This document shows, one piece after another, positions 1-56,961 of a DNA stretch of 64,000 nucleotides. Origin of the DNA: Phaeosaccion multiseriatum (taxonomy: Eukaryota; Protista; Ochrophyta, other classes). The stretch's first letter is position 1. Each line of letters starts with the position of its first letter. Below the pieces are notes generated by a model. That model searched no databases and was not told where the DNA came from. It saw only the letters and a program-made list of their open reading frames with translations. The stretch is taken from positions 3,224,001 to 3,288,000 of the forward strand of contig OZ218954.1 in the NCBI GenBank assembly GCA_965112735.1, in the 5' to 3' direction. The translations under genes were made by a program, and so were the position numbers.

Positions 1-608
1 TTTGTATGTTTATCATCACTCTGCTCATTGATTTGACAAAAAGCATTTGCAATTTGCAATCAATCGGTCTCTCGTCCGATGATTGGTTGGGCCGTCTCTC
101 TCTTTCTCTCTCTCGAGTCGAGCTGACCCGCACGCACACACGCGCGCACGTCCGCCATACAGAGTGAGCGGACTCCGAGTCGAGTCGCTCGTGTCTGCGC
201 GGAGGGGGTGTCCCATGTTCCAGGGCCCCCCGTGTTGCGTTACGATCTGCAATCGTTCCGTTCGGAATCAGTTCCGGTGCGCTTCTCCCCAGCAGGCAGT
301 ATACTTGTACTTCCGCTGGCTTTTGTTCGGTGCTGTTTGCTGGCTGCGCGTATTTTGCTTGACCCGAAGGGAAGGAAGGGATGAAACTGATGAAACAGTC
401 CGACGGCCGGGAGGCTGAGGGACAAGCCAAGAAGACTCTTTCTCTTTCACTCGTCCCACTCAGGAAATCAGAGGCTAAGGACCAAAGGAGGGAGTTCGGA
501 GAGAGTACACAGAGAGTTCATGAGCCCCTCGTCCTCCCGCGCCCCGTGTTGAAGCCCATCTGCTGCCATCTGTCGCGACCCATCCATCCATCCATCCATC
601 ACGATCAC

Positions 609-765
<157 letters not shown>

Positions 766-899
766 GCACCATCTCCTTCAATGCAGTTGCTGGCCCTGCC
801 CTCTCTGAGGGAGATGGCATTCGATGGCATGGTCCACCTCAGAGTCCCCTTTCCCCTCTCCTTCCTCTCTGTCTCTCTCCACATCTCGCGCACGTCCGT

Positions 900-1110
900 C
901 CCTCCTCCTCCTCCTTCTCCTTCTCCTCCTCCCTCCCTCTCCCCCCCCCCCCTCCTCCTCCTCCTCCTCCTCCTCCTCCTCCTCCTCCTCCTCCTTCTCC
1001 TCCTCCTCCTCCTCCTCCTCCTCCTCCTCCTCCTCCTCCTTCTCCTCCTCCTCCTCCTCCTCCTCCTCCTCCTCCTCCTCCTCCTCCTCCTCTTTCTCCC
1101 TCCTCCTCCT
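900..1110. repeat. (CCT)n microsatellite downstream of the channel stop codon
   Basis: Direct inspection. Confidence 0.95.
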
Positions 1111-1165
1111 GCTAGCTACTCTCGGTGACGCTCCTTTCTAATCAGAAACAACCCCTCACCAGCCA

Positions 1166-4100
1166 TCAGCCAGCAAGCCTCCCTACTGACATATCTATCG
1201 CGTCAAGCACAGCGCTCTCCTCCTCTACGCTGGGGCTCCTCACGCGTGCATCTCCTTCCCCTTCTCCTTCTTCTTGTCCTCCTTCGCCCTCCTCCCCGTC
1301 CGCGCAACTCCCCACCTTCAACATCAAAGACGAAGAGTCACTCCCTGGCGTCCCTGATTCCATACTTAGCAACTGCATTCCATCGCTGTGACATTCCGTC
1401 GCTTCGTCGTCGCCAAGAGCAACCGAACTTTCCTCGATGTCAAGGGCGTTGGGGCATGTCGTCGCCAGCCGAGCTATCACCGGTTGTATCACCAACGGCT
1501 GCTGCTGCTCCGGCGTCGCTGACAGCTCCACCCTCTTATGGACTACTGCCTCCCTCACCTTTTCCCCGGCTACTACCTCTCTGCCACCAGCTGCTGTGTC
1601 ACCAACTGCTTGTCGTTTCCCTGTCTCCAGCGTGGACGATGGCGGCAGTCCCCCTACTCGATCGCTACCCTCCCTCTCCTCCTTCTTCTCCTCCTCCTCA
1701 TCATCATCATCCTCCTCCCCCTCCACCTCCTCCTCCTCCTCCTCCTCCTCCTCCTCCTCCTCCTCCTCCTCCACCACCTCCACCTCCACCTCCTTCTCTC
1801 TCTCCTTATCCTCGCTAACATCCACCGGCTGAGCCTGAATCTGCAAAGCCGTGAAGCTCTTCCTCCCCCCATCTGGCGGCACAGCAGCAGTCGATCCTGC
1901 TAGAGCACCCTCTCTCACCAGCTGCATAAATACATGCGTATTGAAGCAGTCGACTTTCTGAAACGCATTCATCGTCCTGGCGCGAGGCGGCAGCTCCCCA
2001 CTGCCGCTACTGCTCAGACCACTCCCCTTTCCTCCCCCACCCCCGCCCACACGCCCACTCCCTCCTTTCCGCGCCCGTCCAGGGGACAACTGAGGTGACA
2101 AGGACTGTTCTTGTTGCTGCTGCTGCTGCTGCTGCTGCTGTTGTTGCTGTTGTTGCTGCTGCTGCTGTACCACCAACTTGTTGGGAGAGTCCGCTCCCAT
2201 CATGCTGCTGACCTCCATCAACAGAGGACGGTACTCCTTCAGCACAGGGAAAGGCTGAGCCGCTGCCTTGGACCTGTGAAACCGTACGGACACGTATGTG
2301 TAACCGTAAAGGCATGTACAAAACAAATGGTAGGGGTTGATGTGGAGTGACTGAGTTAGCGGCGTGTGTGTGTGTGTGTGTGTGTGTGTTGACGGCTGCT
2401 GCCTCCTCCCTCCATCCCCCACTCCGTCCCTCCCCTCCCCTCCCCTCCGTCTCCTCCCTCCGTCTCCTCCCTCCCTCTCTTCCCTCCCTCCCCTCCCCTC
2501 CCCACCCCTCCCCTCCCCTCCCTTCCCTCCCTCCCTTCCCTCCCTACCTCCCTCCCCTCCCCTCCCCTCCCCTCCCCCTCCCTCCCTCCCTCCCTCCCTC
2601 TCCTCCCCTCCCTCCCTCTGTCCCTCTGTCCCATACTCATCCCCGCCCCCCCCCCTCCCCGCTTCACGCACCGACTTAGCTCCTCGAAGGCCTGAGAGAA
2701 CATTGCGCTTTCTAGCGCCTCTCTCAACAGCCTACCAAGCTTGGGGTTCCGAGTCACCATTTTGCTGATGTTGCGATTAGAGAGGAGGTAGAGATGGAGG
2801 GTAGTGAAGGCTCGTACTGCGAGGTCGTGGTCGGGAACCTGTTGTTGTTGTTGAGGAAGGAAGGAGGGAGGGAAGGAGGGACGGAGGGAGGGACGGGCGG
2901 ACGGACGGACGGAAGGACGGAGGGAGGGGGGGAGGGAGGAGGGGAGGGGAGGGAGAAGGGCGTTATTAATCTTCGTATAAGCTTTTACGCACTTGAAGAG
3001 GTATGAGTTTTTGCGGGGAGGGGAGGGGGTGGTGAGGGGAGAGGATGGCACTGGATGGGGAGGGAGGATGGCACTGGATGAGGAGGGGAGGGGATGGTCT
3101 CTAGCCAGAGGTCTGACACGTCTCCAACGATATGCAAATGAGGGATTACAGGCTAAGAGACACATCCCCGCCCCCCCCCCACATCCAGTGCCATCCTCCC
3201 TCCCCATCCAGTGCCATCCTCTCCCCCTGCTTCATCCTCTCCCCTCCACTCCCCTCCTCTCCCCATCCACTGCCATCCCCTCCTCTCCTCTCACCTCAAG
3301 AATCTTGTTAGTGTATCCAAAGAACTTCCCGGAGGGGATGATGGCGAGCACGACTTCGTCCGCTTCACCGTTATGTACAGACACGGTATATGCCTCACCA
3401 ATGCCTTTCACTACGGGGGGGGGGGAGGGAGGGAGGGAGGGAGGGAGGGAGGGAGGGAGGGAGGGAGGGAGGGAGGGAGGGAGGGAGGGAGGGAGGGAGG
3501 GAGGGAGGGAGGGAGGGAGGGAGGGAGGGAGGGAGGGAGGGAGGGAGGGAGGGAGGGAGGGAGGGAGGGAGGGAGGGAGGGAGGGAGGGAGGGAGGGAGG
3601 GAGGGAGGGAGGGAGGGAGGGAGGGAGGGAGGGAGGGAGGGAGGGAGGGAGGGAGGGAGGGAGGGAGGGGAGAGAGCGAGAGAGCGACGGGAAGAGAGGG
3701 GGGAGGGAAGAGAGACCGGAGATGTGCATTCGTTGTTTGTGAGTGGAGAGACTTCTAACATACATTTTCACCACCACCACCACCACCATCCACCTTTCTC
3801 CGTCCGTCCGTCTGTCCGTCCCTCCCTTCCTCCCTCCCTCCCTCCCTTTCCACCACCACCACCGCCGCCGCCATGACTTGCCATCCCCCGTCCCCACCTC
3901 ACACAACTCACCGACAAAGTAGATTCCTTGGCTGAAGCGAGAGCATTCATACACATCTTCTCCCTGCGAGTAGAGCTGCGGACGAAGGTACTGCATGATG
4001 GCGCTCACAAAGCTGAGCTTCTGCCGATGGAAGATGGGAATCACCCGCACACTCGCCGGATGACACTGCAGCATCACCAGCTGTCGGAGCCTCGGCGGCA

Positions 4101-4637
4101 TGCGCTGTAAAATGTACGACTCATCGTAGGCGCTCTTCCACCCCAACAGATACGCCATGTGCGCCCGCACCGCATCCCGCAGCGTCCCCATCACCACCTT
4201 CTCTTCCAGATAGTTATTCACCTCGTTGAGTTGGTTGTTGCGATGCACACCTCCTGACGTGGGGTGTCTGGCCAGATTCCCCACGGAACCAATGACGTAA
4301 CTGAAGAGAGTGGTTCCGCACACCATGGTAAAGACGGCCACCACTCTCTCCCGGTCGTTAAGGGGGGCAATGTCACCGTAACCGACCGTGGTGATGGTGG
4401 TGACGGCCCAATACAGAGAGGCGAGGTAGGTCTTCATCATCTGCGGTAGGATACGTAAGGAATACATAAGCGTAGCAAAGGATAGGACGGCGTGATAGTT
4501 ACTCATTAAATGGATGGTTGGTTGGTTGGTTGGTTGGTTGGTTGGTTGGTTGGTTGGTTGGTTGGTTGGTTGGTTGGTTGGTTGATTGCTTGCTGACTTC
4601 GCTGCTTGGTTGCTTGCTCGCGTGCTTGGTTGGTTGG

Positions 4638-4671
<34 letters not shown>

Positions 4672-7600
4672 CCCTCCCTCCCTCCGTCCGTCCTTCCTTC
4701 TTTCCTTCCGTCCTTCGTTCCTTCCCTTCGTCAATCATTGGTTCCTTCCTTCCTTCTTTCCTTCCGTCCATCCGTCCGTTCTCCCTTCCTTCCTTCCTTC
4801 CTTCCTGCCTTCCTTCTGCCCCTCCTTCCTTGACTTACCTTGTTGCCGGTGAGCCCGTCCTTCACCCACCACGAGTCCGGTGAATCATCGTCTTTAGAGA
4901 AGAACCACCAAATACACGCAAAGATGTGCGCCGAGTAATAGATGATGATGAACACATTCAGCACCTCGTATACGCCGCGAGGAATGTCCAACCCGTGTGA
5001 AGTCCCCTCCTGTTGGTGGGGGGGTTGGTGGTACAGGGGTTGGTGGTACAGGGGTGGGTGCGTAGATTGGTGGGTGGGTGGGTGGGTGGATGTGGGTGCG
5101 GGTGACAGAGTTGGGGGTGGTGGGCGGGACAGGGTGTGGGTGGGGAAAGGTTGTGTGTGTGTGGGTGGGTGGGTGTGTGTGTGTGTGGGTGTGTGTGGGT
5201 GTGGGTGGGTGGGTGGATGGGTCGGTGAGGGAGGGGTGGGTGGGTGGGTGGATGTGTGGATGGGTAGGTGGGCGCGCAGGTAGGGGTGTGGGTGTGGGAG
5301 TGGGTGTGAGGGATGGAGGCAAGGAAGATGAGGGGGACGAGGAGCGAGGAAAAGAGGGACGAGGAGCAAGGAGGACGTGGGAGGGGGTGAGTGCGTGAGT
5401 GAGTGCGTGAGTGAGTGCGTTGAGCCAGTGGGCTGGTGGGTAAGTACATTGCTTCCTCCCTCCCTCCCTCCCTCCCTTCCCTCCTTCCTTCCTTCCTTCC
5501 TTCCCACCCTACAAACACCACATCAGCACACCAAAACACACGAAACACCCCAACAACACCCCAGCAACAGCTCAACAACAGTTCAACAACACCCAAACAT
5601 ACCCACCCAACCTCACCCACCCAACCTCACCCACCTTGTCACCCGTTGCCCGCAGCTCCGTAATCTGCCGCTTTAAGCGCCCCAACCTTCTCAGGCGGAA
5701 AATTCGCAACAGCTGAAGGACTCGAACCCAGCTCGCTGGGCGGTCCCCCAACTGAATGAGATACAAGGGCAGTGTGGACGACATGTCTACAAGGAACCAA
5801 CCCTTCATGTAACGCCCGGCGAGCATGGAGGGCACAGTTACATACACCATCTGTTGGTGATACAGGGAGGCACGGAGGGAGGGAGGGAGGGAGGGAGGGA
5901 GGGGGGGAGGGAGGGCGTGGGAGGAGGGAGGTTTTTCTTAGTTCGGTGCTTCGTTTGCTCGTTCCTGTTCCATACCTATATACCTATCCCTACATGCGCC
6001 GACCGCACGCACCTACCCACCCACCGCATCCACTGCCATCCCACGCACCTGACTGCCGACCTCTTGCATATAGGCGGTGCGAAAGGTGAGGAGGATGTCT
6101 ATAAAGAACACGCTATCGACCATCAGCTCCACCACCAGCAGCCAAGTTGGGGTGGCGCTCTGTTTGACATACGCTATCCGGAAGGGGAGAATGATGGCGG
6201 TGAGGACCAGGAGGACTGCCACCACTACGTCCCACTTGAGCTTTAGTTTCTGTTGAAGTGTATGTTGGGCGGTTGGTGATACGCGGGGTGGAGTTGGGGG
6301 TGGGGGGGGGGGAATGGGTTGGGGTGCTGACAAGAGAATTGATGCTTAGTTTTGTCCTCCTCAATGCCCCACCAAACTGGCATACATATTGCTCTAGACT
6401 GCCATGGACTGCCATGGACTGCCATGGACTGCCATGGACTGCCATGGACTGCCATGGACTGCCATGGACTGCCATACATCGCCTGCCATACATCGCCTGC
6501 GATAGCCTGACATCAAAGTCATCCCACCCACCCACTCCGCACACACTCCACTCACTCCACTTCCGTCCATTGCCATCCACTGCCATCGCTCTCCCATCCT
6601 CCCTCCTATCCACCCTCCCTCCATCCACTGCCATCCATCCCGCAGACACCCCCCTCCTGCTCACCTGCTCCGGCACGAGAACTCCTCTCCTGTTCACCTC
6701 CTCTACCATCTCCTCCACCTCGACCACCCCATGCAAGACTTCGCCTGAATCGTTCCTTGCCATACTCGCCAGGCCTTCGTTCCCTTGTCGCCATGTCCGA
6801 ACGAGGGCCATTCCCAGACCACTTGCTCCGCCCTGGTTCGCCTTAGGGTTGACAAGTTGAGAGAGAGAGGGTGGCGGGGTTGTGGTCCAAGTGGGTTAGA
6901 TTGAGGGGAAGGGAGGGGAGGAGAGAGGAGGGGAGCGGATGGGAGGGGAGGGGAGGGGAGGGGAGAGGAGGGGAGGGGAGGGGAGGGGAGCGGAGGGGAG
7001 GGGAGGAGGGGAGGGACGAAGGAGAGGGAAGAGGAGGGCAGAGCCGACTTTTACCCCTACCCCTCCCTCTACCTCCACCGCTTACCTCTTGTCGCGTTCT
7101 CCGATACGCCATCGCCTTCTTCCACACCTGATTTGCGTGTTTTCTCAACAAACGTCCCTTCATCTGCAGTCTCCCGAGGAGGGAGTGTGTGGCGTCCACC
7201 AGCGACGCTCGTCTACTCGACCCTTGCAGTCGGCGTCTGGCCAGTGCTTTGTTGCGTATCCGAAAGGCAACAACGCAGAGGTTGGCGGGGTCAGTGTGCT
7301 TGATGTGGCGCTTGATGGGAGTCACAATGCCATCTGTGAGGATGTTTTCCTTGAGCACGAGACCATCCTTGGTGAGTTGTTCGCACCCCAGCACTGTTTG
7401 CAAAAGGAGGGAGGGAGGGAGGGAGGGAGGGAGGGAGGGAGGGAGGGAGGGAGGGAGGGAGGGAGGGAGGGAGGGAGGGAGGGAGGGAGGGAGGGAGGGA
7501 GGGAGGGAGGGAGGGAGGGAGGGAGGGAGGGAGGGAGGGAGGGAGGGAGGGAGGGAGGGAGGGAGGGAGGGAGGGAGGGAGGGAGGGAGGGAGGGAGGGA

Positions 7601-10600
7601 GGGAGGGATTGAGTGAGTGAGGGTCGGACTGACTGACTGACGGAATAAGCGTGTGTATGGGCGTTAGAGTGCGGAGGGGAGATTCAGACCCTTCATCCGT
7701 CCCTCCGTCCCTCCCTCTCTTCTTATTCCCTCCCCCACCCACCCACCCACCCACCCACACCCACACCAACCCACCTTCCTCCCATGCCTCCCTGATCTCC
7801 TCCGCCGTCTCTTCAAAGTGCTCCTTGACTTCGGCATACATGGCAAGCATTGGCAGCAAGTCGCCCTGGTCGAACCAAATCAGATCCGAGGGGGCAGCGG
7901 CATAGAAGGTCGCGGGACACGCACTCTGCTCTCCAATCAAACACTCTAATCCAAAGGATGAGCCTGAGCTCCAGGTGCCCACAAAGGCTCCTAAGTGGGT
8001 GTCCACGTTGGCGGAGGTCGAGATGAAGGACTGGTAGTTGAGAAAGCCGCTGCCCCCCCCACCACCACCCCCTCCTCCTCCTCCTCCTCCTCCTCCTCCT
8101 CCTCCTCTCACTCCCCCGCTCCCTCCTCCTGCTCCTCCTCCTCCTTTTTCTCCCCTTCCGTCATCATCCGTCTCAGACCCACACGAGTCATCCTCCACGT
8201 CCTCGAAGGTCTCCTCCGCGTAGCCCTCCACCCTCCCCTTGACCACAAAGTACATTTCCAGCAGGACGTCGTGCTGATGACATATAATGTCACCATACTG
8301 TGCTTCCATGGGCTTGAGCTTGGTGACGAGGAGGGAGAGGAGGTCGTGGCTGAAGAGTACGGGGTCTTGAAACAGACTGAGCTGATGGAGGAGTGTCTTG
8401 TTGTTGCCGAGGAGGGTTTGGTACCGCAAGGGTTTGGGTAGGTCGGACAAGATGGCGCCTTCATTGAACACTGACGTTTTGAAGTAGTAGTACCTGTTTA
8501 TGAGAGGGGGGAGGGAGGGAGGGAGGGAGGGAGGGAGGGAGGGAGGGAGGGAGGGAGGGAGGGAGCGAGGGAGGGAGGGAGGGAGGGAGGGAGGGAGGGA
8601 GGGAGGGAGGGAGGGAGGGAGGGAGGGAGGGAGGGAGGGAGGGAGGGAGGGAGGGAGGGAGGGAGGGAGGGAGGGAGGGAGGGAGGGAGGGAGGGAGGGA
8701 GGGAGGGAGGGAGGGAGGGAGGGAGGGAGGGAGGGAGGGAGGGAGGGAGGGAGGGAGGGAGGGAGGGAGGGAGGGAGGGAGGGAGGGAGGGAGGGAGGGA
8801 GGGAGGGAGGGAGGGAGGGAGGGAGGGAGGGAGGGAGGGAGGGAGAGAGAGAGGGAGAGAGGGAAGGAGGGAGGGAGGGAATGAGTCATAAGAGTAAGAA
8901 CACAACGAGGATGGGTACTCTTCAAGCAAAGGGGGCAGGGCGTATCGTTCGTGATGGTCACTATAACTTATGACAACCAAAGTCACGCTGTAAGTGATAG
9001 AGGATGCCAGGGGTCACTTTCAGTGACATATGCTGTCTAAGTGACTTATGGCATTCACCTGTAGTGGCGCTTGACCTGATCGCAGAGCCCGTCGGAGAGC
9101 CTTCTGTCAATGAGGTAATCGGAAACCTCTTGCAAGTTTCGCTGCGTGGCCTTCTGGATAGGGGCGATGTACTTGACGATCCGTCGGGTGGCTGGAAAAA
9201 GGAAAAGAGCGAGGGGGGGAGGGAGGGAGGGGGACAGCAAGGGAGGGAGGGAGAGAGGGAGGGAGGGGGACAGCGAGGGAGGGAGGGAGGGAGGGAGGGA
9301 GGGAGGGAGGGAGGGAGGGAGGGAGGGAGGGAGGGAGGGAGGGAGGGAGGGAGGGAGGGAGGGAGGGAGGGAGGGAGGGAGGGAGGGAGGGAGGGAGGGA
9401 GGGAGGAATTTTGGTTCCGTTTCAGTTCCTTCCTCCGCACTCCTCGCACCCCCCTTGCCCCTCCTCTGATACATTCCGCCCTCTTTGCCTCACGCACTCC
9501 CCTCGCCCCCTTGCTCTGCTCTGACTCACCGGCAATGATGAATCCAAAGAGGGTGGCACCTACAAGCTCGATGAAGATGCACATGAGCATTTCCTTTGGT
9601 TTTGCAGTGAAGGGGTGGGGAGGGGGAGGGGCAGCAGCATTGTTGCATGGGTGGGTCAGCAGCAGGGCGGTGTGTGGCTGGAACATGCGTATGAGACAAC
9701 GGAACAGCACTCCAACTCTCTCTCTCTTCCTCCCTCACTACGGCACTCTCACTCACTCACTCACTCACTCACCCCCCCTACCCACGCACTCACTCACTCA
9801 CTCACCCCCCCTACCCACGCACTCACCCACTCACTCACCCACCCACTCTCCCACCCTTGTCACTCACCTGCTGAGTGTCTGCCGCCACCTCACCGTAGCC
9901 CACTGTCATCATTGTGTAGACGATAAAGTAAAACGCCGCAAGGTACTGGCTGACCATTGCCCCTGGCAGGCCGCACTTCTCCCACCCGCCACTGTGCTGG
10001 TCCTGGATGTAAACGGCATCATAACATGCCACGTAGAACCACAAGCAACCAAGAAGATGGGCGGCGAGGATGACCATCAAGAGGGTCTTGCCAATGCTGG
10101 TGGAGACGGGGCTAATCTCCACCCCGAGTACCGTGAACTTGACCACACGCAGCAGACTTGCCAGGCGGAGGCTCTTTAGTACTTGCAGCACACTCCAGCG
10201 GCTCTGTGACCCCGTGATCCGAAGAAACACAGTGTCCAACGGTACGGCCGACAGCACATCCACGATCATCCAACCGCGGGCGTAGCGAGCCGCTACTAGT
10301 TTGGGGTGGTTGAACAAGACGTCGTCTTCATAGTAGCCCGTATGAAGCTGCACGGCAACATCGGCAATGTAGCACATGTCCACCACCACCGCCATGCCAA
10401 ACCCAAACCCCGCCGCCGGGCTGTTAAAGGCCATCCGCCAGGGTACCACCAGCACCGTATAGAGAAGGAGGAAGGTGATGAGTTGCTCCCAGGCCACCCG
10501 GAAACGATTGAGAGGGTCCAGCATGTAGCGCGAGTGCTTTAGGCGAAGCTGAACGTTACGCTTAGCCCCCCGGGCCTTCTTGCGCAGAAACACCGCACTG

Positions 10601-10987
10601 AAAATGGTCAGTCCTTTCCCTTCCCCTCCTTCTCCCGCCCCGACGACAGGCATCTTGTCCTTGTCGTTGGCCCTCCGAATGTCTTCATCTATATCCTCCC
10701 TGAGCGTCTCCCAAAAGGAGGCCCCTGGTGTGCTGGTGGTGCGTTTCAACCCCGTCCCGCTGTGGGCCCACTTTCGACTTTCTACCCGCTGCAAAATATT
10801 TGTAGGCCGACCTTGAGTCGCCAGCTTCTCAATGTTTCCTCCTCGGCCTGCGGGGTTGATGCGGGCTCGACTGATTTCCCTTTCCCCTTCCCCGTCCCCG
10901 CCGGACGCCGACGCCGCACCCGCCTCCGCTACCGCCTCTGCGACTTTGCTTCCACCCCCCGCGCCGCCCGTTTGCTGTTGTTGCTGA

Positions 10988-11022
<35 letters not shown>

Positions 11023-12905: not shown

Positions 12906-15900
12906 ATGAGTGGATCAGCAGAGCTGGCGTTGGGGGAGAGCGTGGACCTGGGTCTGGCCGACTCCGTAGAGCTTGTGGGGTCTCCCTTGCGCACTGAGGG
13001 TATGATGTCTCCTCTCAGTGGGGAGGAACAAGACGGAGAGGAAGGCGGAGAGGAGGGCGCCGAGGAGGAGGGCGAGGAAAGCGGAGAGGGGGGCGCCGAG
13101 AATGAGGAGGAGGGAGGAGATGCGGATGAGGAGGTGGTGGCGAAGGAGGACGACCACGAGGAGGAGGATGAGGGGGAGGAGGCGGAGGAGGAAGAGGAGG
13201 AGGACGAGGAGGTGAATGACAAGGAGGCGGAGACGGAAGAGGAGGGGATGGAGGAAGAGGACGAAGAGGAGGAGGACGACGAAGAGGTGGACGCGAAGAA
13301 ACAGGAGGGGGAGGTGGAGGATGTGAAGGAGGAAGAAGAGGAGGAGAAGGAGGAGGAGAAGGAGGAAGAAGAGGAGGAGAAACAGGGGCAGTGGGCCGAA
13401 GGGGGGAATGAAGAGGAGGCTGAGCAAGCTTCTGCAATCAGGAAGCTGGCCGCAGCGAGGCAGAGGAGAAGGCAGCAGCATGCGCAGGAAGGGGCAGAGA
13501 CAGCAGCGGCCGCTGAAGAGGGGGGGAGCAGCAATAGAGGGGAGACCCTGAAGAGGATGGAGGACGAGACGGAGGAGGAGGCGAAGGAGAAGGAGGAGTC
13601 GATTCAGAAGCTTGCCGCGATCCGCCGGAAGAGGAAGGCTGGGACAAAGAGCCAAGGAGAGGATGCTAAGGTGGAGGAAGAGACGCAAGTGAAGAAAGAG
13701 GAACAGGAGCAGGAGGAGACGGAGGAAGAGGCGAAGGAGAAGGAGGAGTCGATTCAGAAGCTTGCCGCGATCCGCCGGAAGAGGAGGGCTGGGACAAAGA
13801 GCGAAGGAGACGATGCTAAGGTGGAGGAAGAGACTCAGGTGAAGGAAGAGGAGGAGGAGCAGGAGGAGACGGAGGAGGAGGCGAAGGAGAAGGAGGAGTC
13901 GATTCAGAAGCTTGCCGCGATCCGCCGGAAGAGGAGGGCTGGGACAAAGAGCGAAGGAGAGCATGCTAAGGTGGAGGAAGAGACGCAAGTGAAGAAAGAG
14001 GAAGAGCAGGAGGATACGGAGGAGGAGGCGAAGGAGAAGGAGGAGTCGATTCAGAAGCTTGCCGCGATCCGCCGGAAGAGGAGGGCTGGGACAAAGAGCG
14101 AAGGAGACGATGCTAAGGTGGAGGAAGAGACGCAAGTGAAGAAAGAGGAGGAGCAGGAGGAGACGGAGGAGGAGGCGAAGGAGAAGGAGGAGTCGATTCA
14201 GAAGCTTGCCGCGATCCGCCGGAAGAGGAAGGCTGGGACAAGGAGCGAAGGAGAGCATGCTAAGGTGGAGGAAGAGACGCAAGTGAAGAAAGAGGAGGAG
14301 CAGGAGGAGACGGAGGAGGAGGCGAAGGAGAAGGAGGAGTCGATTCAGAAGCTTGCCGCGATCCGCCGGAAGAGGAGGGCTGGGACAGGGAGCGAAGGAG
14401 AGCATGCTAAAGTGGAGGAAGAGACGCAAGTGAAGAAAGAGGAAGAGCAGGAGGAGACGGAGGAGGAGGCGAAGGAGAAGGAGGAGTCGATTCAGAAGCT
14501 TGCCGCGATCCGCCGGAAGAGGAGGGCTGGGACAAAGAGCGAAGGAGAGGATGCTAAGGTGGAGGAAGAGACGCAAGTGAAGAAAGAGGAGGAGGAGCAG
14601 GAGGAGACGGAGGAGGAGGCGAAGCAGAAGGAGGAGTCGATTCAGAAGCTTGCCGCGATCCGCCGGAAGAGGAGGGCTGGGACAAAGAGCGAAGGAGACG
14701 ATGCTAAGGTGGAGGAAGAGACTCAGGTGAAGGAAGAGGAGGAGGAGCAGGAGGAGACGGAGGAGGAGGCGAAGGAGAAGGAGGAGTCGATTCAGAAGCT
14801 TGCCGCGATCCGCCGGAAGAGGAGGGCTGGGGCAAGGAGAGAAGGAGAGCATGCTAAGGTGGAGGAAGAGACTCAGGCGAAGGAAGAGGAGGAGCAGGAG
14901 GAGACGGAGGAGGAGGCGAAGGAGAAGGAGGAGTCGATTCAGAAGCTTGCCGCGATCCGCCGGAAGAGGAGGGCTGGGACAAAGAGCGAAAGAGACGATG
15001 CTAAGGTGGAGGAAAAGACGCAAGTGAAGGAAGAGGAGGAGCAGGAGGAGGAGACGGAGGAGGAGGCGAAGGAGAAGGAGGAGTCGATTCAGAAGCTTGC
15101 CGCGATCCGCCGGAAGAGGAGGGCTGGGACAAAGAGCGAGGGAGAGGAGACAAAGGTGGAGGAGGGGGGGGAAGAGACTCAGGTGAAGGAAGAGGAAGAG
15201 GAGCAGGAGGAGACGGAGGAGGAGGCGAAGGAGAAGGAGGAGTCGATTCAGAAGCTTGCCGCGATCCGACGGAAGAGGAGGGCTGGGACAAAGAGTGAAG
15301 GAGAGGATGCTAAGGTGGAGAAGGAGGGCGAGGAGAACCAGGTGAAAGAGGAGGAGCTGGAGGAGGAGGCGAAGGAGAAGGAGGAGAAGGAGGAGTCGAT
15401 TCAGAAGCTTGCCGCGATCCGCCGGAAGAGGAGGGCTGGGACAAAGAGCGAAGTTGAAGAGAAGAATGTGGAGGAGGGGGAGAAGGAGAAGGAAGAGGAG
15501 AAGCGGGAACAGGAGGAGACGGAGGAGGAGACGAAGGAGAAGGAGGAGAAGGAGGAGTCGATTAGAAAGCTCGCCGCGATCCGCCGGAAGAGGAAGGCTG
15601 AGACGAAGGGCAATGGAGAGGGTGCCAAAGGGAAGAAGGATGAAGAGGAGACCCAGGTGGAGGAGGAGCAAGAGACGGAGGAGGATGCAAAGGAGAGAGT
15701 GGAGTCGAGTAAGAAGGGCGACAAGACCAAGGAGGACGAGGAGGGGGAGAAGGAGGATGACGGGAAGACGGAGAAGGAGGAGGAGCAGGATGGAGCCATA
15801 GCAAAACTAGCGGCGGTGAGGAGGAGGAGAGGGGGCGGGGGCAAGACAGGAGGAGGAGGAGGGCTGAGCAAAGGCACCGCACCTGAGTGCAACGCGGCTT

Positions 15901-17724: not shown

Positions 17725-20279
17725 GCTCACTATCCCCCAGTGGGAGGAGGAGGCGTCAACGACATGGACATGAACGGAGGAGCCGCCTCCCCTCCTAGGA
17801 CCGTGCCAGCGTCATGTTCAGCAGCCTCGAACTCACCCCCTCGGCTCTTCCCTAGTGCAGCGATCAAGTCTCGCATCGCAGAAGGGGGTGAAGGTGGGGG
17901 TGGAGCGGGGCAATCCATGTCTGTGTATCGGAGGCGCATCCTTGCTGAGAAGAAGGCAATGAAACAGGCCGCCAAGATCGAGCGTATGCGGCTGGAGAGC
18001 AAAGTGGATAAGGTTGGTTTGAGTTTCAGATTTTTTTTATCAGTCAGTCAGTCAGTCAGTCAGTCAGTCAGACACTCAGTCAATGCCCTGGTGGCGGCAG
18101 TCGCATAGTTGGACAGAGCCTCTCATGTACACACACGCACCCACCCACCCACACCCACATCCACACCCAACCCGTGCCCTGACACCCAACCCCCTCCCTG
18201 TCCTGACACTTAACACCCTCCCTCTGTCCTGACACCCAACACCCTCTGTCCTGACACCCAACACCCTCTGTCCTGACACTCAACACCCTCCCTCCGTCCT
18301 GACACCCAACACCCTCTGTCCTGACACCCAACACTCTCTGTCCTGACACTCAACACCCTCCCTCTGTCCTGACACCCAACACCCTCTGTCCTGACACCCA
18401 ACACCCTCTGTCCTGACACCCAACACCCTCCCTCTCTCCTGAGACCCAACACCCTCTGTCCTGACACCCAACACCCTCCCTCTGTCCTGACACCCAACAC
18501 CCTCCCTCTGTCCTGACACCCAACCCCCTCCCTGTCCTGACACCCAACACCCTCCCTCTGTCCTGACACCCAACACCCTCCCTCTGTCCTGACACCCAAC
18601 ACCCTCCCTCTGTCCTGACACCCAACACCCTCCCTCTCTCCTGACACCCAACACCCTCCCTCTGTCCTGACACCCAACACCCTCCCTCTGTCCTGACACC
18701 CAACACCCTCCCTCTGTCCTGACACCCAACACCCTCCCTCTGTCCTGACACCTATCACCCTCCCTCTGTCCTGACACCCAACACCCTCCCTCTGTCCTGA
18801 CACCTATCACCCTCCCTCTGTCCTGACACCCAACACCCTCCCTCTGTCCTGACACCCAACCCCCTCCCTGTCCTGACACCCAACACCCTCCCTCTCTCCT
18901 GAGACCCAACACCCTCTGTCCTGACACTTAACACCCTCCCTCTGTCCTGACACCCAACACCCTCCCTCTGTCCGGACACCCTTAGGCTCGGCAGTACGGA
19001 GAAGATGTCCGTCGCCAAGCTCGGGAGGAGATGGAGGCTCGGCAGCAAGGAGGTAGGCCGGGTGGGTTAGACTATGGAGGAGGGGGAAGAGCTGTGAAGC
19101 GAGGCACCGGCATACGGGGGGAGGAGGGGCACGGAGTATTCTCCTTTGGCAAGGATGGGAGGATGAGGATGATCAGAGACAAGGGTGGCACGCTGAGCGA
19201 GGAGGAGCAGCAGCAGCAGCGTCGGGTGTTTGAGCATCGGCAGCGGCGGGCGCTCCAGCAGCGGCAGCAGCGGAATCAGGATGAGCAGCAGTTGGTGGTA
19301 CAGCAACAGTTGGCGCTACAGCGACAGCAGCAGCGGAATCAGGATGAGGAGGAGGAGGGGGGGGGGGGGGTGGGGGGTGGTGTCCTTCCCCAGATTGGGC
19401 CCCAGATTGAGCCCCAGACTGGAGTGGGACGTTCGATCAGGGGCAGCGGTAGAGGAGCGGGTTCGTCTCGGCTCTTTGATCGAGAGGCATCAGCTGCAGC
19501 AGTTGGTGATACGGCGCATTTGAGCTCGACGAGTGCCAGAGAGGGGCGGAGCACTCGATACCTGCCCCCCGGGAGGGAGGGTGGAGCGGCACCAAGGGGG
19601 CCTACCCAGATGCAACGAGTGAACTTCGGTCAAAGCGACGATGGGGGGTGGGCAGAAGGAAGAGGAGGAAGAGGAGGAGGGGGGGAGCAGGAAGAGGAGC
19701 TGGTGGCGGGTTTCGGGAGAGGAAGCACTGTGATGCGAGGGCGCCTCAGCTCGAGAGAGAAGGTGGAGCGATGCAGGGTACAGCGAGAAAAGGTGAGAGA
19801 GTCTCAGAGTGAATGTGGTAGAGCTCGTACCTTCTCCTCTGCTCTTTTCTTACTCTCCCTCTCTCTCTCTTACCCTCCACTCCCCCCCCTCTCCTCTCCT
19901 CTCCTCTTCTCTCCTCACTTCCCTCCTCTCCTCTCCTCTCCTCACCCCTCTCCCCTCGCCGTCCGTCGCTCTCCCTGTCTCTCTCCCTCTCTCTTACCCT
20001 CCTCCTTCCCATCCGCTCCTCTCCCCCCCCCTTTCCTCTCCTCCCACCCCCTCCCCTCCCCACTCCCACTACAACACGCACAGGCGACTCTCGAGCTACG
20101 CCAACGACGAGCCCGGAGAGAAGAGCATGAGCAGGACAAGACGAAAGGAGCAGGAGGGGGAGGAGGAGGGGGTCCAAACCTCGTGCTTGACGTAGGGAAT
20201 GATAAGCCGGCGCCTCCTAGCGGAGTCCGGAGAGAAGGGGGAGGAGGGCGCAGTGGGAAGTACAGTCAACACCACCACC

Positions 20280-34755: not shown

Positions 34756-35140
34756 TCAAGCCTCCCGCACTCTCGCCCAGGCTGGATGGTTGTAAAACCC
34801 TTTTCGCGGGCTCCAAAAAAAGGTATCATCGACAGGAGTGGCCGGACTCGAACCCCTCTCCTCTGCGCCTGCCCTCCCTCCTGCCGCTCCTGCCACCGCT
34901 GGCCCTATGGGAGGAGGCACCCCTTCTACGCCTGCTGCCAATACATCCTTCAGCACTGCTACTATCCCACCTCCATCCTCATTGCTGCTGCTGCTCCTAG
35001 CATCGCTGCTCGCTCCTCCATGGCTGCTTCCTTGCCACTCGCCTCCGTCGTCCGTGCTCCACTTCGGGCTCGAAAAGGGCGGACATGGTAATATCGACAT
35101 CATCGATATATGTCTCGACATCGATGGTACTGACGCCCCT

Positions 35141-35182
<42 letters not shown>

Positions 35183-38100
35183 TGTTGCCCGTACTGACTC
35201 GCCCTCCGCATGAGGCGGTGATGCATAAGTGCCCAGCTCACAGTGGGGAAGGCGAGCTCTGAGGAGAGGAACGACCCACCAGAGAGGGAGAGGGAGAGAG
35301 AGAGAAAGAGAGAGAGAGAGTGAGGCAGTGTAAGGAGGGAAGGAGAAGGGGAGGGGGAGGCCATGCGGGACGATAAACCGCAGGGCAGCCGAGAGGGAGA
35401 GAAGGCGAGCTGAAAATGAAACTGCTCCCGCACCTGACCATGGGATTTGATCCCGAGAGAAGAGGCCCACTTCACTTGTCTCTTCTCCAGCCCTCACGAG
35501 GTTAGGATGGGGGATGTGTCCAGAGTAGATGAGCTGACTGAGAGAGAGAGGGAGGGAGGGAGGGAGGGAGGGAGGGAGGGAGGGAGGGAGGGAGGGAGGG
35601 AGGGAGGGAGGGAGGGAGGGAGGGAGGGAGGGAGGGAGGGAGGGAGGGAGGGAGGGAGGGAGGGAGGGAGGGAGGGAGGGAGGGAGGGAGGGAGGGAGGG
35701 AGGGAGGGAGGGAGGGAGGGAGGGAGGGAGGGAGGGAGGGAGGGAGGGAGGGAGGGAGGGAGGGAGGGAGGGAGGGAGGGAGGGAGGGAGGGAGGGAGGG
35801 AGGGAGGGAGGGAGGGAGGGAGGGAGGGAGGGAGGGAGGGAGGGAGGGAGGGAGGGAGGGAGGGAGGGAGGGAGGGAGGGAGGGAGGGAGGGAGGGAGGG
35901 AGGGAGGGAGGGAGGGAGGGAGGGAGGGAGGGAGGGAGGGAGGGAGGGAGGGAGGGAGGGAGGGAGGGAGGGAGGGAGGGAGGGAGGGAGGGAGGGAGGG
36001 AGGGAGGGAGGGAGGGAGGGAGGGAGGGAGGGAGGGAGGGAGGGAGGGAGGGAGGGAGGGAGGGAGGGAGGGAGGGAGGGAGGGAGGGAGGGAGGGAGGG
36101 AGGGAGGGAGGGAGGGAGGGAGGGAGGGAGGGAGGGAGGGAGGGAGGGAGGGAGGGAGGGAGGGAGGGAGGGAGGGAGGGAGGGAGGGAGGGAGGGAGGG
36201 AGGGAGGGAGGGAGGGAGGGAGGGAGGGAGGGAGGGAGGGAGGGAGGGAGGGAGGGAGGGAGGGAGGGAGGGAGGGAGGGAGGGAGGGAGGGAGGGAGGG
36301 AGGGAGGGAGGGAGGGAGGGAGGGAGGGAGGGAGGGAGGGAGGGAGGGAGGGAGGGAGGGAGGGAGGGAGGGAGGGAGGGAGGGAGGGAGGGAGGGAGGG
36401 AGGGAGGGAGGGAGGGAGGGAGGGAGGGAGGGAGGGAGGGAGGGAGGGAGGGAGGGAGGGAGGGAGGGAGGGAGGGAGGGAGGGAGGGAGGGAGGGAGGG
36501 AGGGAGGGAGGGAGGGAGGGAGGGAGGGAGGGAGGGAGGGAGGGAGGGAGGGAGGGAGGGAGGGAGGGAGGGAGGGAGGGAGGGAGGGAGGGAGGGAGGG
36601 AGGGAGGGAGGGAGGGAGGGAGGGAGGGAGGGAGGGAGGGAGGGAGGGAGGGAGGGAGGGAGGGAGGGAGGGAGGGAGGGAGGGAGGGAGGGAGGGAGGG
36701 AGGGAGGGAGGGAGGGAGGGAGGGAGGGAGGGAGGGAGGGAGGGAGGGAGGGAGGGAGGGAGGGAGGGAGGGAGGGAGGGAGGGAGGGAGGGAGGGAGGG
36801 AGGGAGGGAGGGAGGGAGGGAGGGAGGGAGGGGGAGGGAGGGAGGGAGGGAGGGAGGGAGGGAGGGAGGGAGGGAGGGAGGGAGGGAGGGAGGGAGGGAG
36901 GGAGGGAGGGAGGGAGGGAGGGAGGGAGGGAGGGAGGGAGGGAGGGAGGGAGGGAGGGAGGGAGGGAGGGAGGGAGGGAGGGAGGGAGGGAGGGAGGGAG
37001 GGAGGGAGGGAGGGAGGGAGGGAGGGAGGGAGGGAGGGAGGGAGGGAGGGAGGGAGGGAGGGAGGGAGGGAGGGAGGGAGGGAGGGAGGGAGGGAGGGAG
37101 GGAGGGAGGGAGGGAGGGAGGGAGGGAGGGAGGGAGGGAGGGAGGGAGGGAGGGAGGGAGGGAGGGAGGGAGGGAGGGAGGGAGGGAGGGAGGGAGGGAG
37201 GGAGGGAGGGAGGGAGGGAGGGAGGGAGGGAGGGAGGGAGGGAGGGAGGGAGGGAGGGAGGGAGGGAGGGAGGGAGGGAGGGAGGGAGGGAGGGAGGGAG
37301 GGAGGGAGGGAGGGAGGGAGGGAGGGAGGGAGGGAGGGAGGGAGGGAGGGAGGGAGGGAGGGAGGGAGGGAGGGAGGGAGGGAGGGAGGGAGGGAGGGAG
37401 GGAGGGAGGGAGGGAGGGAGGGAGGGAGGGAGGGAGGGAGGGAGGGAGGGAGGGAGGGAGGGAGGGAGGGAGGGAGGGAGGGAGGGAGGGAGGGAGGGAG
37501 GGAGGGAGGGAGGGAGGGAGGGAGGGAGGGAGGGAGGGAGGGAGGGAGGGAGGGAGGGAGGGAGGGAGGGAGGGAGGGAGGGAGGGAGGGAGGGAGGGAG
37601 GGAGGGAGGGAGGGAGGGAGGGAGGGAGGGAGGGAGGGAGGGAGGGAGGGAGGGAGGGAGGGAGGGAGGGAGGGAGGGAGGGAGGGAGGGAGGGAGGGAG
37701 GGAGGGAGGGAGGGAGGGAGGGAGGGAGGGAGGGAGGGAGGGAGGGAGGGAGGGAGGGAGGGAGGGAGGGAGGGAGGGAGGGAGGGAGGGAGGGAGGGAG
37801 GGAGGGAGGGAGGGAGGGAGGGAGGGAGGGAGGGAGGGAGGGAGGGAGGGAGGGAGGGAGGGAGGGAGGGAGGACGAGAGTGAGAGCGAGGGGCAGGGAG
37901 GACGAGAGTGAGAGCGAGGTGCAGGGTCAGTTTCGGGGGAAGGTTTACGGTCAGGTTGAGGGTCACGGCCAGTGTCAGGATCAGGGTCTGTGTCCGGGTG
38001 AGGGTGAGGGTCAGGGTGGAAGTCTCAGATCAGGTGCATCTCATAGGAACCGAACTATTGATTTGATTGAATACACTCATAGCTTGACAATCAAAACTTG

Positions 38101-39266
38101 GGTCGACAAGGGTTCCTCACAAAAGTCTATTCAACTGAGAGTAAACGTCACACTCACACTCACACTCACACTCACACTCACACTCACACTCACACTTGAC
38201 CGATGTGAGGTAGGCTGTAAGTGGCCAGCAGGCCGCGTAGCTCCAGCGTGGCATTCGCTTCCTCCTTGGCCTCCCTTTTCGCCCCCTCTTCCGCCGTCTC
38301 ACCCAGCTCCATGAAGCCTGCCTCGAGAGGGAGAGAGGGGGGGAGGGCGGGGGGGACAGGGAGGGGAGAAAAGGGGAAAGGGAGGAAGAGAGAGCGAGGG
38401 GATGAGAGGGAGAGAGAGGAGGAGGAAGACGGGTAGGGGGTAGGAAAGGAGGGTGGCAAGGAAAGAAAGGGGGGCAAGGGGAGAAGAGGGGGAGAGGGAG
38501 GGACGGAGAGCGAGGGAGACAGAAAGACGGGGAGGGGTCAGGGCGAACGAGCGATCTGAACTCAGCTAGTCATCGCAGGACATAGTCCAGGGGGGACATC
38601 CTGGTGGGATGGACTTACTCTGGTGGGATGGACTTACTCACCTGCAGGAAGAGCCCAGAATCCCTTCCGTGGATGGATGGAGCGCTTTACAAGCAGAATA
38701 CGCTCCTCTCCCGCCCCCTCTCCCTCCTCCTCGTCCTTGCTGCTGCCCTTCACGGGAGAAGCTCTTGTCGTTGCGACGGCGCCACAAACAATGCGAGGAT
38801 TGCGGTCTGCACACGGAGAGCCCGAGATGATGGAAAGAGGGGCGTAGTTTGTTGAGGGCGCTTCACTCTCCTCCCCATCGCCTCAACCCTACTCACAGTC
38901 TATAAAGCCACAAGAGCGGCAAACCCTCCTTCGCTTGCTGTCACCGTCCGGGACTTGGTCTTGGAAGTCTATTTTCCTGAGGGTGCTGCTGCTCCTGTCT
39001 CTGCTACTTGTACTTGGGCTGAGGTTGCGGCCTTCTCGACCACGACGTCGATGTCTCAGCTTGGTCCATTCTACCACCCCAGCGGCCCTCAGCATCTGTT
39101 TGGGCTCTCTTCTTGGGTAGCTTATCCAGAGTGACGCCAGCCCTGCTCTCCTCATGGCTACGATCAACCAAGCCCCGCCAGTTTTTCGATTTTCACTTTT
39201 GTCCCTGCTGATTGGGTACCCAAGTGTGTGAAGAACACCCCGGGGTAGGCTCACAATTTCGGCCAT
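34756..39266 (-). CDS. Zn-ribbon Nudix hydrolase (plant NUDX23-like, putative ADP-ribose/FAD diphosphatase), 5 exons
   Basis: Spliced protein: [25 protein letters not shown]…[40 protein letters not shown] (Nudix box)…HIGQVQLIY…[10 protein letters not shown]…[15 protein letters not shown]. The true start may be a downstream ATG. Confidence 0.9.
35548..37873. repeat. ~2.3-kb essentially perfect (GGGA)n tract in a Nudix intron
   Basis: About 580 units, one interruption near 36832. Confidence 0.9.

Positions 39267-55430: not shown

Positions 55431-56961
<1,531 letters not shown>

What the first reader, a model, noticed from the sequence alone, without database searches (positions are those of the whole stretch)
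35538..38195. Intron with ~2.3 kb of adenosine-free sequence before its 3' AG: extreme distant branch point
Seen: conserved Nudix sequence (HIGQV|QLIY) requires splicing from 38195 to the AG at 35538-35539. The sense strand has no A between 37881 and that AG; it is (CCCT)n then CTCTCTCAG. The nearest branch-like words are a duplicated CTCGCTCTCACTCTCGTCC unit (37872-37918) and CTGAC words (~37925-38015), and the previous AG is near 37988. Established: branch points normally lie ~20-40 nt from the AG, and known distant ones lie a few hundred nt away. Inference: either second-step scanning or looping over ~2.3 kb, or a non-A branch nucleotide.
Basis: partly seen in the sequence, partly recalled or inferred. 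Interest (0 to 1): 0.75.

Follow-up and report, generated by a model that had tools for sequence, protein, structure and literature searches.

The report
Giant CCCT repeat before splice acceptor
A conserved intron of a Nudix hydrolase gene in a stramenopile alga carries 584 copies of CCCT (2.3 kb without one adenosine) right up to its 3' splice site, so if the gene is spliced the branch point lies about six times farther away than any reported in the papers read here; no RNA data could be checked.

Summary
On the minus (sense) strand, 35540-37880 is 2341 nt without an A. It consists of 584 CCCT units with a single 2-nt flaw and ends 9 nt before the AG at 35539/35538.

The exon junction HIGQV|QLIY is required by homology. 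Exon 3 aligns to residues 91-131 and exon 4 to 132-174 of the Ascophyllum orthologue. Ectocarpus and Ascophyllum have an intron at the same codon position and phase, but it is 428 and 426 nt long, has ordinary base composition and holds no CCCT array. The tract is therefore a lineage-specific expansion of this genome's very common microsatellite inside an old intron.

The most likely mechanism is a branch adenosine in the CTGAC/CTCAC cluster just upstream of the tract (37881-38011), with ligation to the first downstream AG 2.34-2.47 kb away. Distant branch points are reported up to about 400 nt. The pattern recurs at 200-390 nt in four introns of the neighbouring channel gene.

The same scan noted similar introns elsewhere in this genome (s1-365266, s1-362904, s1-326425, s1-348191).

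The parts
38897..39155 (-). Exon 1 of the Nudix gene (5' end and start codon not determined). It encodes the zinc-ribbon motif and ends ...CRSCGFID.
   Evidence: Pfam PF14803 Zn_ribbon_Nudix, E=1.4e-5, 25.3 bits against a cut-off of 25.6; sequence
38807..38896 (-). Intron 1 (90 nt, GTGAGT...CAG); the last A is 21 nt from the 3' splice site
38642..38806 (-). Exon 2 (..[24 protein letters not shown])
   Evidence: Reading frame and homology to P0019/P0004 residues around 55-91
38318..38641 (-). Intron 2 (324 nt), C/T-rich, AG exclusion zone 238 nt
38194..38317 (-). Exon 3: Nudix box ([16 protein letters not shown]) through ..YSLPHIGQ + GT
   Evidence: Pfam PF00293 E=8e-6; PDB 3cng residues 73-113, E=7e-9; P0019 residues 91-131, 63% identity
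35538..38193 (-). Intron 3, 2656 nt, phase 2: the intron of the finding
   Evidence: Donor GTGAGT at 38193 and acceptor CAG ending at 35538; same position and phase as the 426-428-nt introns of Ascophyllum and Ectocarpus
38152..38193 (-). Seven tandem GTGAGT units: a microsatellite of consensus donor sites at the 5' end of the intron. Use of any later unit would put TGA in frame.
   Evidence: frame read
37881..38011 (-). Cluster of branch-point-like words (CTGAC x4, CTCAC x4, CTGAT x1). The last six lie inside the AG exclusion zone, and the last CTCAC has its A at 37881, 10 nt before the array.
   Evidence: YTNAY scan; the 28-nt duplication 37867-37926
35549..37870 (-). (CCCT)259 + CC + (CCCT)321 array
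35540..37880 (-). Adenosine-free stretch, 2341 nt, 100% pyrimidine apart from two G's near its 5' end (37875 is one)
35434..35537 (-). Exon 4 (QLIYSGHIP...[13 protein letters not shown]), 104 nt
   Evidence: BLASTP to P0019 residues 132-174
35259..35433 (-). Intron 4 (175 nt); the last A (in CTCAC) is 62 nt from the AG
34756..35258 (-). Exon 5 ([14 protein letters not shown]..., poly-Gln, low-complexity tail, stop codon)
   Evidence: BLASTP to P0019 residues 177-200; ORF end

Best explanation
The genome's very common microsatellite, (CCCT)n, has expanded to about 2.3 kb inside the polypyrimidine tract of an old, conserved phase-2 intron of a zinc-ribbon Nudix hydrolase gene. The expansion lies between the branch-site region and the 3' AG. 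Shown: the position of the tract, the exon junction, the conservation of the intron, and the absence of the tract in relatives. Inferred: the intron is removed by the ordinary U2-type spliceosome. U2 pairs with one of the CTGAC/CTCAC words at 37881-38011 immediately upstream of the array, and the adjoining C/U tract serves as an AG-independent polypyrimidine tract for the first step. Exon ligation then uses the first AG downstream of the branch, 35539/35538, which is 2.34-2.47 kb away. That AG is found by scanning or by diffusion of an unstructured tract that holds no competing sites. The expansion is tolerated because a unit made only of C and T cannot create an AG, a GT or a branch adenosine, so it lengthens the AG exclusion zone without adding a decoy.
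For: The tract and its limits are. The junction is required by homology: exon 3 aligns to P0019 residues 91-131 and exon 4 to 132-174 with no gap, and exon 5 to 177-200. The orthologous intron has the same codon position and phase in Ascophyllum (426 nt) and Ectocarpus sp. (428 nt), with balanced composition, longest A-free runs of 17 and 27 nt, and an AG exclusion zone of 47 nt. There is no CCCT array in 43.5 kb of the relatives' loci, against 23 arrays (3.6 kb) in this window. Many database hits are genomic ORF fragments that stop exactly at ..PHIGQV/M, which is the same exon end. Twelve YTNAY words lie in the 323-nt unique part of the intron, six of them downstream of the last AG, and there is no AG from 37988 to the acceptor. 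This is the layout described for mapped distant branch points (PMC1431707). The architecture recurs in the neighbouring channel gene, where four introns have CCCT arrays of 200-390 nt running to the acceptor, and the AG exclusion zone has a median of about 235 nt over 13 curated introns. No transposon ends or target duplication flank the array.
Against: The distance is about six times the largest reported in the papers read (about 400 nt). Distal branch points in human weaken 3' splice-site use as distance grows (PMC5378181). The near-perfect purity of the array could mean a very recent expansion, so intact exons do not prove that the expanded allele still works. The absence of AG in the 117 nt between the last AG and the array is only weakly unexpected (2.5 expected). 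Only 2-3 of the 5 long-tract introns have a strict YTNAY word at the array's upstream edge.
Confidence: 0.5

Rival explanations
1. The expanded allele is not productively spliced. The intron is retained, or exon 4 is skipped, which shifts the frame (GT + AGCTC...). The gene is impaired or silent on this haplotype, and the exons are intact only because the expansion is recent.
For: The array is 99.9% pure, as expected of a young or actively slipping repeat. GC-rich intronic expansions in human are linked to retention of the host intron (title of Sznajder et al. 2018, seen in the reference list of PMC6651174; the paper itself is not held). Splicing efficiency falls with branch-to-AG distance. 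There is no RNA evidence.
Against: The same architecture at 200-390 nt occurs four times in one neighbouring channel gene with intact exons. Scan notes report kb-scale cases elsewhere, so the organism evidently lives with such introns. All five Nudix exons are open and the catalytic Nudix box is intact.
Confidence: 0.2
2. The assembly overstates the tract, or the tract is one variable allele, and the true tract is much shorter. The intron would then be an ordinary distant-branch-point intron of this genome, with a few hundred nt.
For: Pure microsatellites are the hardest sequence to size, and no reads could be inspected.
Against: The array is embedded in unique sequence on both sides with no N. 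It carries one internal imperfection at a fixed place, which is unlike padding. Arrays of 128-332 nt in the same window and scan notes of arrays of about 400 units elsewhere suggest real kb-scale arrays in this assembly.
Confidence: 0.13
3. The branch forms close to the 3' splice site on a C or U inside the end of the tract (non-adenosine branch), so no long-range search is needed.
For: In human, 8.4% of mapped branch points are C and 8.4% are U (PMC4315302). There is no A within 2341 nt.
Against: The array and the CT dinucleotide run before the CAG offer no yUnAy-like pairing partner for U2, whereas a dozen good matches sit just upstream of the array. Non-A branches are reported to work with lower efficiency.
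Confidence: 0.12

Closest known systems
Distant branch points with extended AG dinucleotide exclusion zones (alpha-tropomyosin exon 3 at -175, PTB exon 11 at -351; Gooding et al. 2006, PMC1431707)
   Same: The order is the same: a branch-site consensus, then a long pyrimidine tract, then the first AG serving as the 3' splice site, with no AG in between. The previous AG lies just upstream of the candidate branch sites.
   Different: The distance here is 2.34-2.47 kb, against up to about 400 nt. The spacer is a pure tetranucleotide microsatellite, not a regulatory region. The known cases are mostly regulated alternative exons, whereas this is a constitutive-looking exon inside a catalytic domain. 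The branch is not mapped here.
Human PKD1 intron 21 pyrimidine-rich element (2.5-kb polypyrimidine tract that forms H-DNA; PMC11667243)
   Same: Both are kb-scale homopyrimidine tracts on the sense strand of an intron, and both are mirror-repeat sequences able in principle to form triplex DNA.
   Different: [quoted passage not shown] It is not described as running up to the acceptor or as excluding branch adenosines. This one is a single pure (CCCT)n array ending 9 nt from the AG.
Intronic tetranucleotide expansions of human disease, such as (CCTG)n in CNBP intron 1 (75-11,000 repeats; PMC10849350)
   Same: A pyrimidine-rich 4-nt repeat expanded to kb scale within an intron of an expressed gene.
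   Different: The disease repeats are pathogenic, contain G (so they can pair and bind MBNL) and are not the polypyrimidine tract of the acceptor. Here the repeat has no purine, and similar arrays are frequent in this genome's introns.
Zinc-ribbon Nudix hydrolases (PF14803 + PF00293; solved example 3cng from Nitrosomonas europaea; brown-alga orthologues CAM9139923.1 and CAM9265347.1)
   Same: The Nudix box with the EEANA variant, the YSLPHIxQV strand and an N-terminal CxxC ribbon are shared. Identity to the brown-alga proteins over exon 3 is 63-71%.
   Different: The substrate is unknown. The C-terminal tail is low-complexity and species-specific. Intron 4 sits at a different codon than in Ascophyllum.

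Membership tests
Distant-branch-point intron with an extended AG exclusion zone | No AG between the candidate branch region and the 3' splice site used | tested here: met
   The last AG is at 37989/37988 and the next is 35539/35538, giving an exclusion zone of 2450 nt
Distant-branch-point intron with an extended AG exclusion zone | A yUnAy branch consensus with an adjacent polypyrimidine tract at the upstream edge of the zone | tested here: met
   Six YTNAY words lie between 37981 and 37881; the last CTCAC is 10 nt before the array
Distant-branch-point intron with an extended AG exclusion zone | The branch nucleotide is mapped to the distant site (lariat) | not testable with these tools
   This needs lariat RT-PCR or lariat sequencing.
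Distant-branch-point intron with an extended AG exclusion zone | The 3' splice site is actually used in mRNA | not testable with these tools
   Only homology supports it. There are no RNA reads and no same-species cDNA or protein in the collections.
Zinc-ribbon Nudix hydrolase | Nudix box GX5EX7REUXEEXGU, in the EEANA variant | tested here: met
   PF00293 E=8e-6, above its cut-off; aligned without a gap to 3cng residues 73-113
Zinc-ribbon Nudix hydrolase | N-terminal Zn_ribbon_Nudix domain | tested here: inconclusive
   PF14803 scores 25.3 bits against a cut-off of 25.6, E=1.4e-5, on exon 1
Zinc-ribbon Nudix hydrolase | A contiguous Nudix fold across the exon 3 / exon 4 junction | tested here: met
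   The exons align to P0019 residues 91-131 and 132-174, and Pfam's NUDIX domain covers residues 65-172 of P0019
H-DNA-forming homopurine-homopyrimidine mirror repeat (PKD1 intron 21 type) | A long homopyrimidine strand with mirror symmetry | tested here: met
   GC skew and AT skew are both 1.000 over 35750-37749, and (CCCT)n is its own mirror image
H-DNA-forming homopurine-homopyrimidine mirror repeat (PKD1 intron 21 type) | Formation of a triplex, or polymerase stalling | not testable with these tools
   This needs chemical probing or replication and transcription assays
Transposon-borne (CCCT)n cassette (as noted elsewhere in this genome by the scan) | Terminal inverted repeats or a target-site duplication flanking the array | tested here: not met
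   The two flanks share no inverted word of 9 nt or more and no direct word of 10 nt or more

The most novel reading that the evidence does not exclude
In this stramenopile the spliceosome routinely completes exon ligation hundreds to thousands of nucleotides downstream of the branch. The choice of 3' splice site would then be set only by 'first AG after the branch', with essentially no distance limit. [quoted passage not shown]
Probability: 0.4. Interest if true: 0.8.

Novelty: new variant of a known kind. Interest (0 to 1): 0.62.

Why it matters
How the spliceosome finds the 3' AG after the first step (linear scanning, diffusion, or help from proteins) and how far it can reach are old questions. 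They have been studied mostly with engineered substrates of limited size. One paper read here notes that technical limits on substrate size prevent in vitro validation of very distal branches (PMC5378181).

A functional gene whose only possible branch adenosines lie 2.3 kb or more from the acceptor would extend the distances reported in the papers read here about sixfold. The genome also appears to hold many shorter versions of the same layout, which would make it a natural test system.

It would further explain why this particular microsatellite can flood introns in one orientation. A repeat of C and T only cannot create any splice signal. If the allele is instead unspliced, the locus is an example outside human disease of a microsatellite expansion disabling a gene.

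Tried and rejected

2. Same-species protein or cDNA. The word-index search with the exon 5 region and with exon 3 gave nothing. An exact 33-nt word from exon 4 was absent from the metagenome contigs.

3. Exon 4 alone against solved structures gave only chance hits. Its placement came from BLASTP against the brown-alga orthologue instead.

4. Alternative splice pair. Donor 38195 with the second AG (35535/35534) also keeps the frame, but it gives HIGQ|LIY, two residues shorter than every orthologue. I rejected it in favour of 38193/35538. Either way the acceptor abuts the array.

5. Transposon-borne array. There are no terminal inverted repeats and no target duplication, so this was rejected for this locus.

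6. Looping out by RNA structure. The sense strand of the intron holds no G-rich partner for CCCU repeats (composition). I did not pursue this by folding.

7. Rfam found no RNA family anywhere in the window.

8. A simple test of whether A-free runs end in AG more often than chance over all 25 runs of 80 nt or more was uninformative (5 of 25). Only the longest pure runs show the pattern.

9. Literature searches for this genome's CCCT microsatellite and for its dispersed 11-nt word found nothing relevant.

10. The joined (spliced) protein was never built, searched or folded.
Full report
WHAT IS THERE

On the minus strand of the window, positions 35540-37880 form a 2341-nt stretch without a single adenosine. 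It is the longest such run in the window by sixfold. Tandem Repeats Finder calls it 584 copies of a 4-nt unit at 99% matches. A script shows (CCCT)259, two extra C's, then (CCCT)321, followed by a CT dinucleotide run and CAG. GC skew and AT skew are both exactly 1.000 across the core. The only AG after 37989/37988 is the one at 35539/35538. A 28-nt tandem duplication carrying CTCAC lies at 37867-37926. CTGAC words have their A's at 38011, 37975, 37951 and 37927.

THE GENE AND THE JUNCTION

Reading the minus strand gives a five-exon gene:
- Exon 1 runs to 38897 and carries a zinc-ribbon motif (PF14803, 25.3 bits, just under the cut-off).
- Exon 2 is 38806-38642.
- Exon 3 is 38317-38194 and carries the Nudix box (PF00293, E=8e-6). 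It aligns without a gap to residues 73-113 of the solved Nudix hydrolase 3cng.
- Exon 4 is 35537-35434.
- Exon 5 is 35258-34756.

The donor that keeps the frame and the protein length is GTGAGT at 38193. An exhaustive profile search with exon 3 found 105 relatives. The best full-length ones are annotated proteins of the brown algae Ectocarpus sp., Ascophyllum nodosum and Hapterophycus canaliculatus.

BLASTP places exon 3 at residues 91-131, exon 4 at 132-174 and exon 5 at 177-200 of the Ascophyllum protein. Pfam's NUDIX domain covers residues 65-172 of that protein. The two exons either side of the array must therefore be joined for the catalytic domain to be whole. Everything was done exon by exon and by reference.

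THE INTRON IS OLD AND THE ARRAY IS NEW

In the Ascophyllum and Ectocarpus genomic loci, an intron interrupts the same codon in the same phase, after the second base of the codon that follows Gln. There it is 426 and 428 nt long with balanced base composition, longest A-free runs of 17 and 27 nt, and an AG exclusion zone of 47 nt. A third relative, a Logan contig, has the same donor position. Many database hits are genomic ORF fragments that end exactly at ..PHIGQV/M.

None of the 43.5 kb of relatives' DNA contains a CCCT array of four or more units, whereas this 64-kb window has 23 of them, 3.6 kb in total. Without the array the intron here would be about 320 nt. The array is therefore a lineage-specific expansion inside a conserved intron. 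The flanks share no inverted word of 9 nt or more and no direct word of 10 nt or more, so there is no sign that a transposon brought it in.

The organism is a photosynthetic stramenopile outside the sampled brown algae: exon 3 is 63-73% identical to theirs, and the ubiquitin is of the stramenopile type on my own reading. Its own proteins are not in the collections.

IT IS THE EXTREME OF A LOCAL RULE

I curated 13 introns by hand, nine in the neighbouring cyclic-nucleotide-gated channel gene and four in the Nudix gene, and measured them. AG exclusion zones are 54-424 nt with a median of about 235, apart from the 2450 nt here. Four channel introns carry CCCT arrays of 200-390 nt that run to the acceptor. 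Two of them, like this one, have no A at all before the AG (215 and 310 nt). Two end in AAACAG, where the only A's are 3-9 nt from the junction. Six of the seven longest pure pyrimidine runs in the window end within 8 nt of an AG.

The intron of the finding also begins with seven tandem GTGAGT units. Both of its ends are thus microsatellites made of splice-signal-like words. Unchecked first-stage notes describe the same polarity, and kb-scale repeat introns, on other pieces of this genome. The scan has therefore met this architecture before on other DNA.

HOW IT MOST LIKELY WORKS (INFERENCE)

The layout matches the one described for mapped distant branch points: branch consensus, pyrimidine tract, and the first AG used, with the previous AG just upstream of the branch region (PMC1431707). 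Twelve YTNAY words lie in the 323-nt unique part of the intron. Six lie downstream of the last AG, and the last has its A at 37881, 10 nt before the array. By contrast, neither the array nor the CT run before the CAG offers anything for U2 to pair with.

I therefore favour a branch at 37881-38011, a first step that does not need the AG, and exon ligation to the first AG 2.34-2.47 kb downstream. A repeat of C and T cannot generate an AG, a GT or a branch A. This would explain why this repeat, in this orientation, can grow in that place without creating decoys.

A rough polymer estimate of my own, not a tool result, supports feasibility. The end of a 2.3-kb unstructured RNA would be at a micromolar effective concentration near the catalytic centre. 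That is hundreds of times lower than for a 30-nt spacer but not negligible when no competing AG exists.

WHAT SPEAKS AGAINST IT, AND THE RIVALS

Branch points in human lie 19-37 nt from the acceptor in 90% of cases, and 78% are A (PMC4315302). The farthest well-studied ones are about 175-400 nt away, and distance weakens use of the AG (PMC5378181).

No read-level step beside the array could be run either.

The purity of the array may mean that it is young, in which case intact exons say little about function. I therefore keep three rivals:
- the allele is not productively spliced (0.20);
- the array is shorter than assembled, or is one variable allele (0.13);
- the branch forms on a C or U near the acceptor (0.12).

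COMPARISON AND NOVELTY

The closest known mechanism is the distant-branch-point intron with an AG exclusion zone. Two of its sequence features were tested and met, and the two functional ones could not be tested. The closest known sequence object is the 2.5-kb polypyrimidine element of human PKD1 intron 21 (PMC11667243). That element is a mosaic inside the intron and is not described as excluding branch sites up to the acceptor. Intronic CCTG expansions in CNBP are a cautionary parallel, because expansions can harm splicing.

I class the finding as a new variant of a known kind. The same logic applies, but the distance is about six times beyond what the papers read here report, the spacer is a pure microsatellite, and the architecture looks common in this genome.

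VERDICT

Interest is 0.62.

Noticed in passing
window 38152-38193 (minus strand): The intron of the finding starts with seven tandem GTGAGT units, each a consensus 5' splice site. Use of any unit after the first would bring TGA into frame.
   Followed up: partly
window 3411-9529 (minus strand): Five of the nine introns of the channel gene end in AACAG. Two of these follow CCCT arrays of 209 and 380 nt, so the only nearby A's are 3-9 nt from the junction. This hints at either very close or very distant branch sites in this organism.
   Followed up: partly
window, 20 sites (for example 1486, 5853, 6272, 11195, 19502, 20329, 27819, 58884): The 11-nt word GTTGGTGATAC (up to one mismatch) occurs 20 times, against 0.47 expected from shuffles. 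One copy forms the last bases of the intron ending at 5851. The scan's notes report the same word genome-wide.
   Followed up: partly
window 13550-15716 (+): A coding-looking tandem repeat of 147/297 nt, about 14 copies at 88% identity, inside a 1372-aa Glu/Lys-rich open frame (repeat motif ...EESIQKLAAIRRKRRAGTKSEG...).
   Followed up: no
window 55431-56579 (minus strand): A polyubiquitin gene with five head-to-tail units of 228 nt at 94% DNA identity. The protein has the [16 protein letters not shown] variant, which I read as stramenopile-type.
   Followed up: no
window 18178-18981: A 26-nt minisatellite, 32 copies at 88% identity, C-rich on the + strand.
   Followed up: no
window 35259-35433, compared with L002 17572-17902: The intron after exon 4 sits at a different codon here (after ..IPWS) than in Ascophyllum (after ..ETDEV). 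This indicates intron sliding, or loss and gain, between the lineages.
   Followed up: partly
P0006 (ENA contig, 175 aa): An intron-less, bacterial-looking zinc-ribbon Nudix protein is as close to exon 3 (71% identity) as the brown-alga orthologues are.
   Followed up: no
L002 10172-16296: The first intron of the Ascophyllum orthologue is about 6.1 kb, against 90 nt here. Intron sizes in this gene are very labile between lineages.
   Followed up: no
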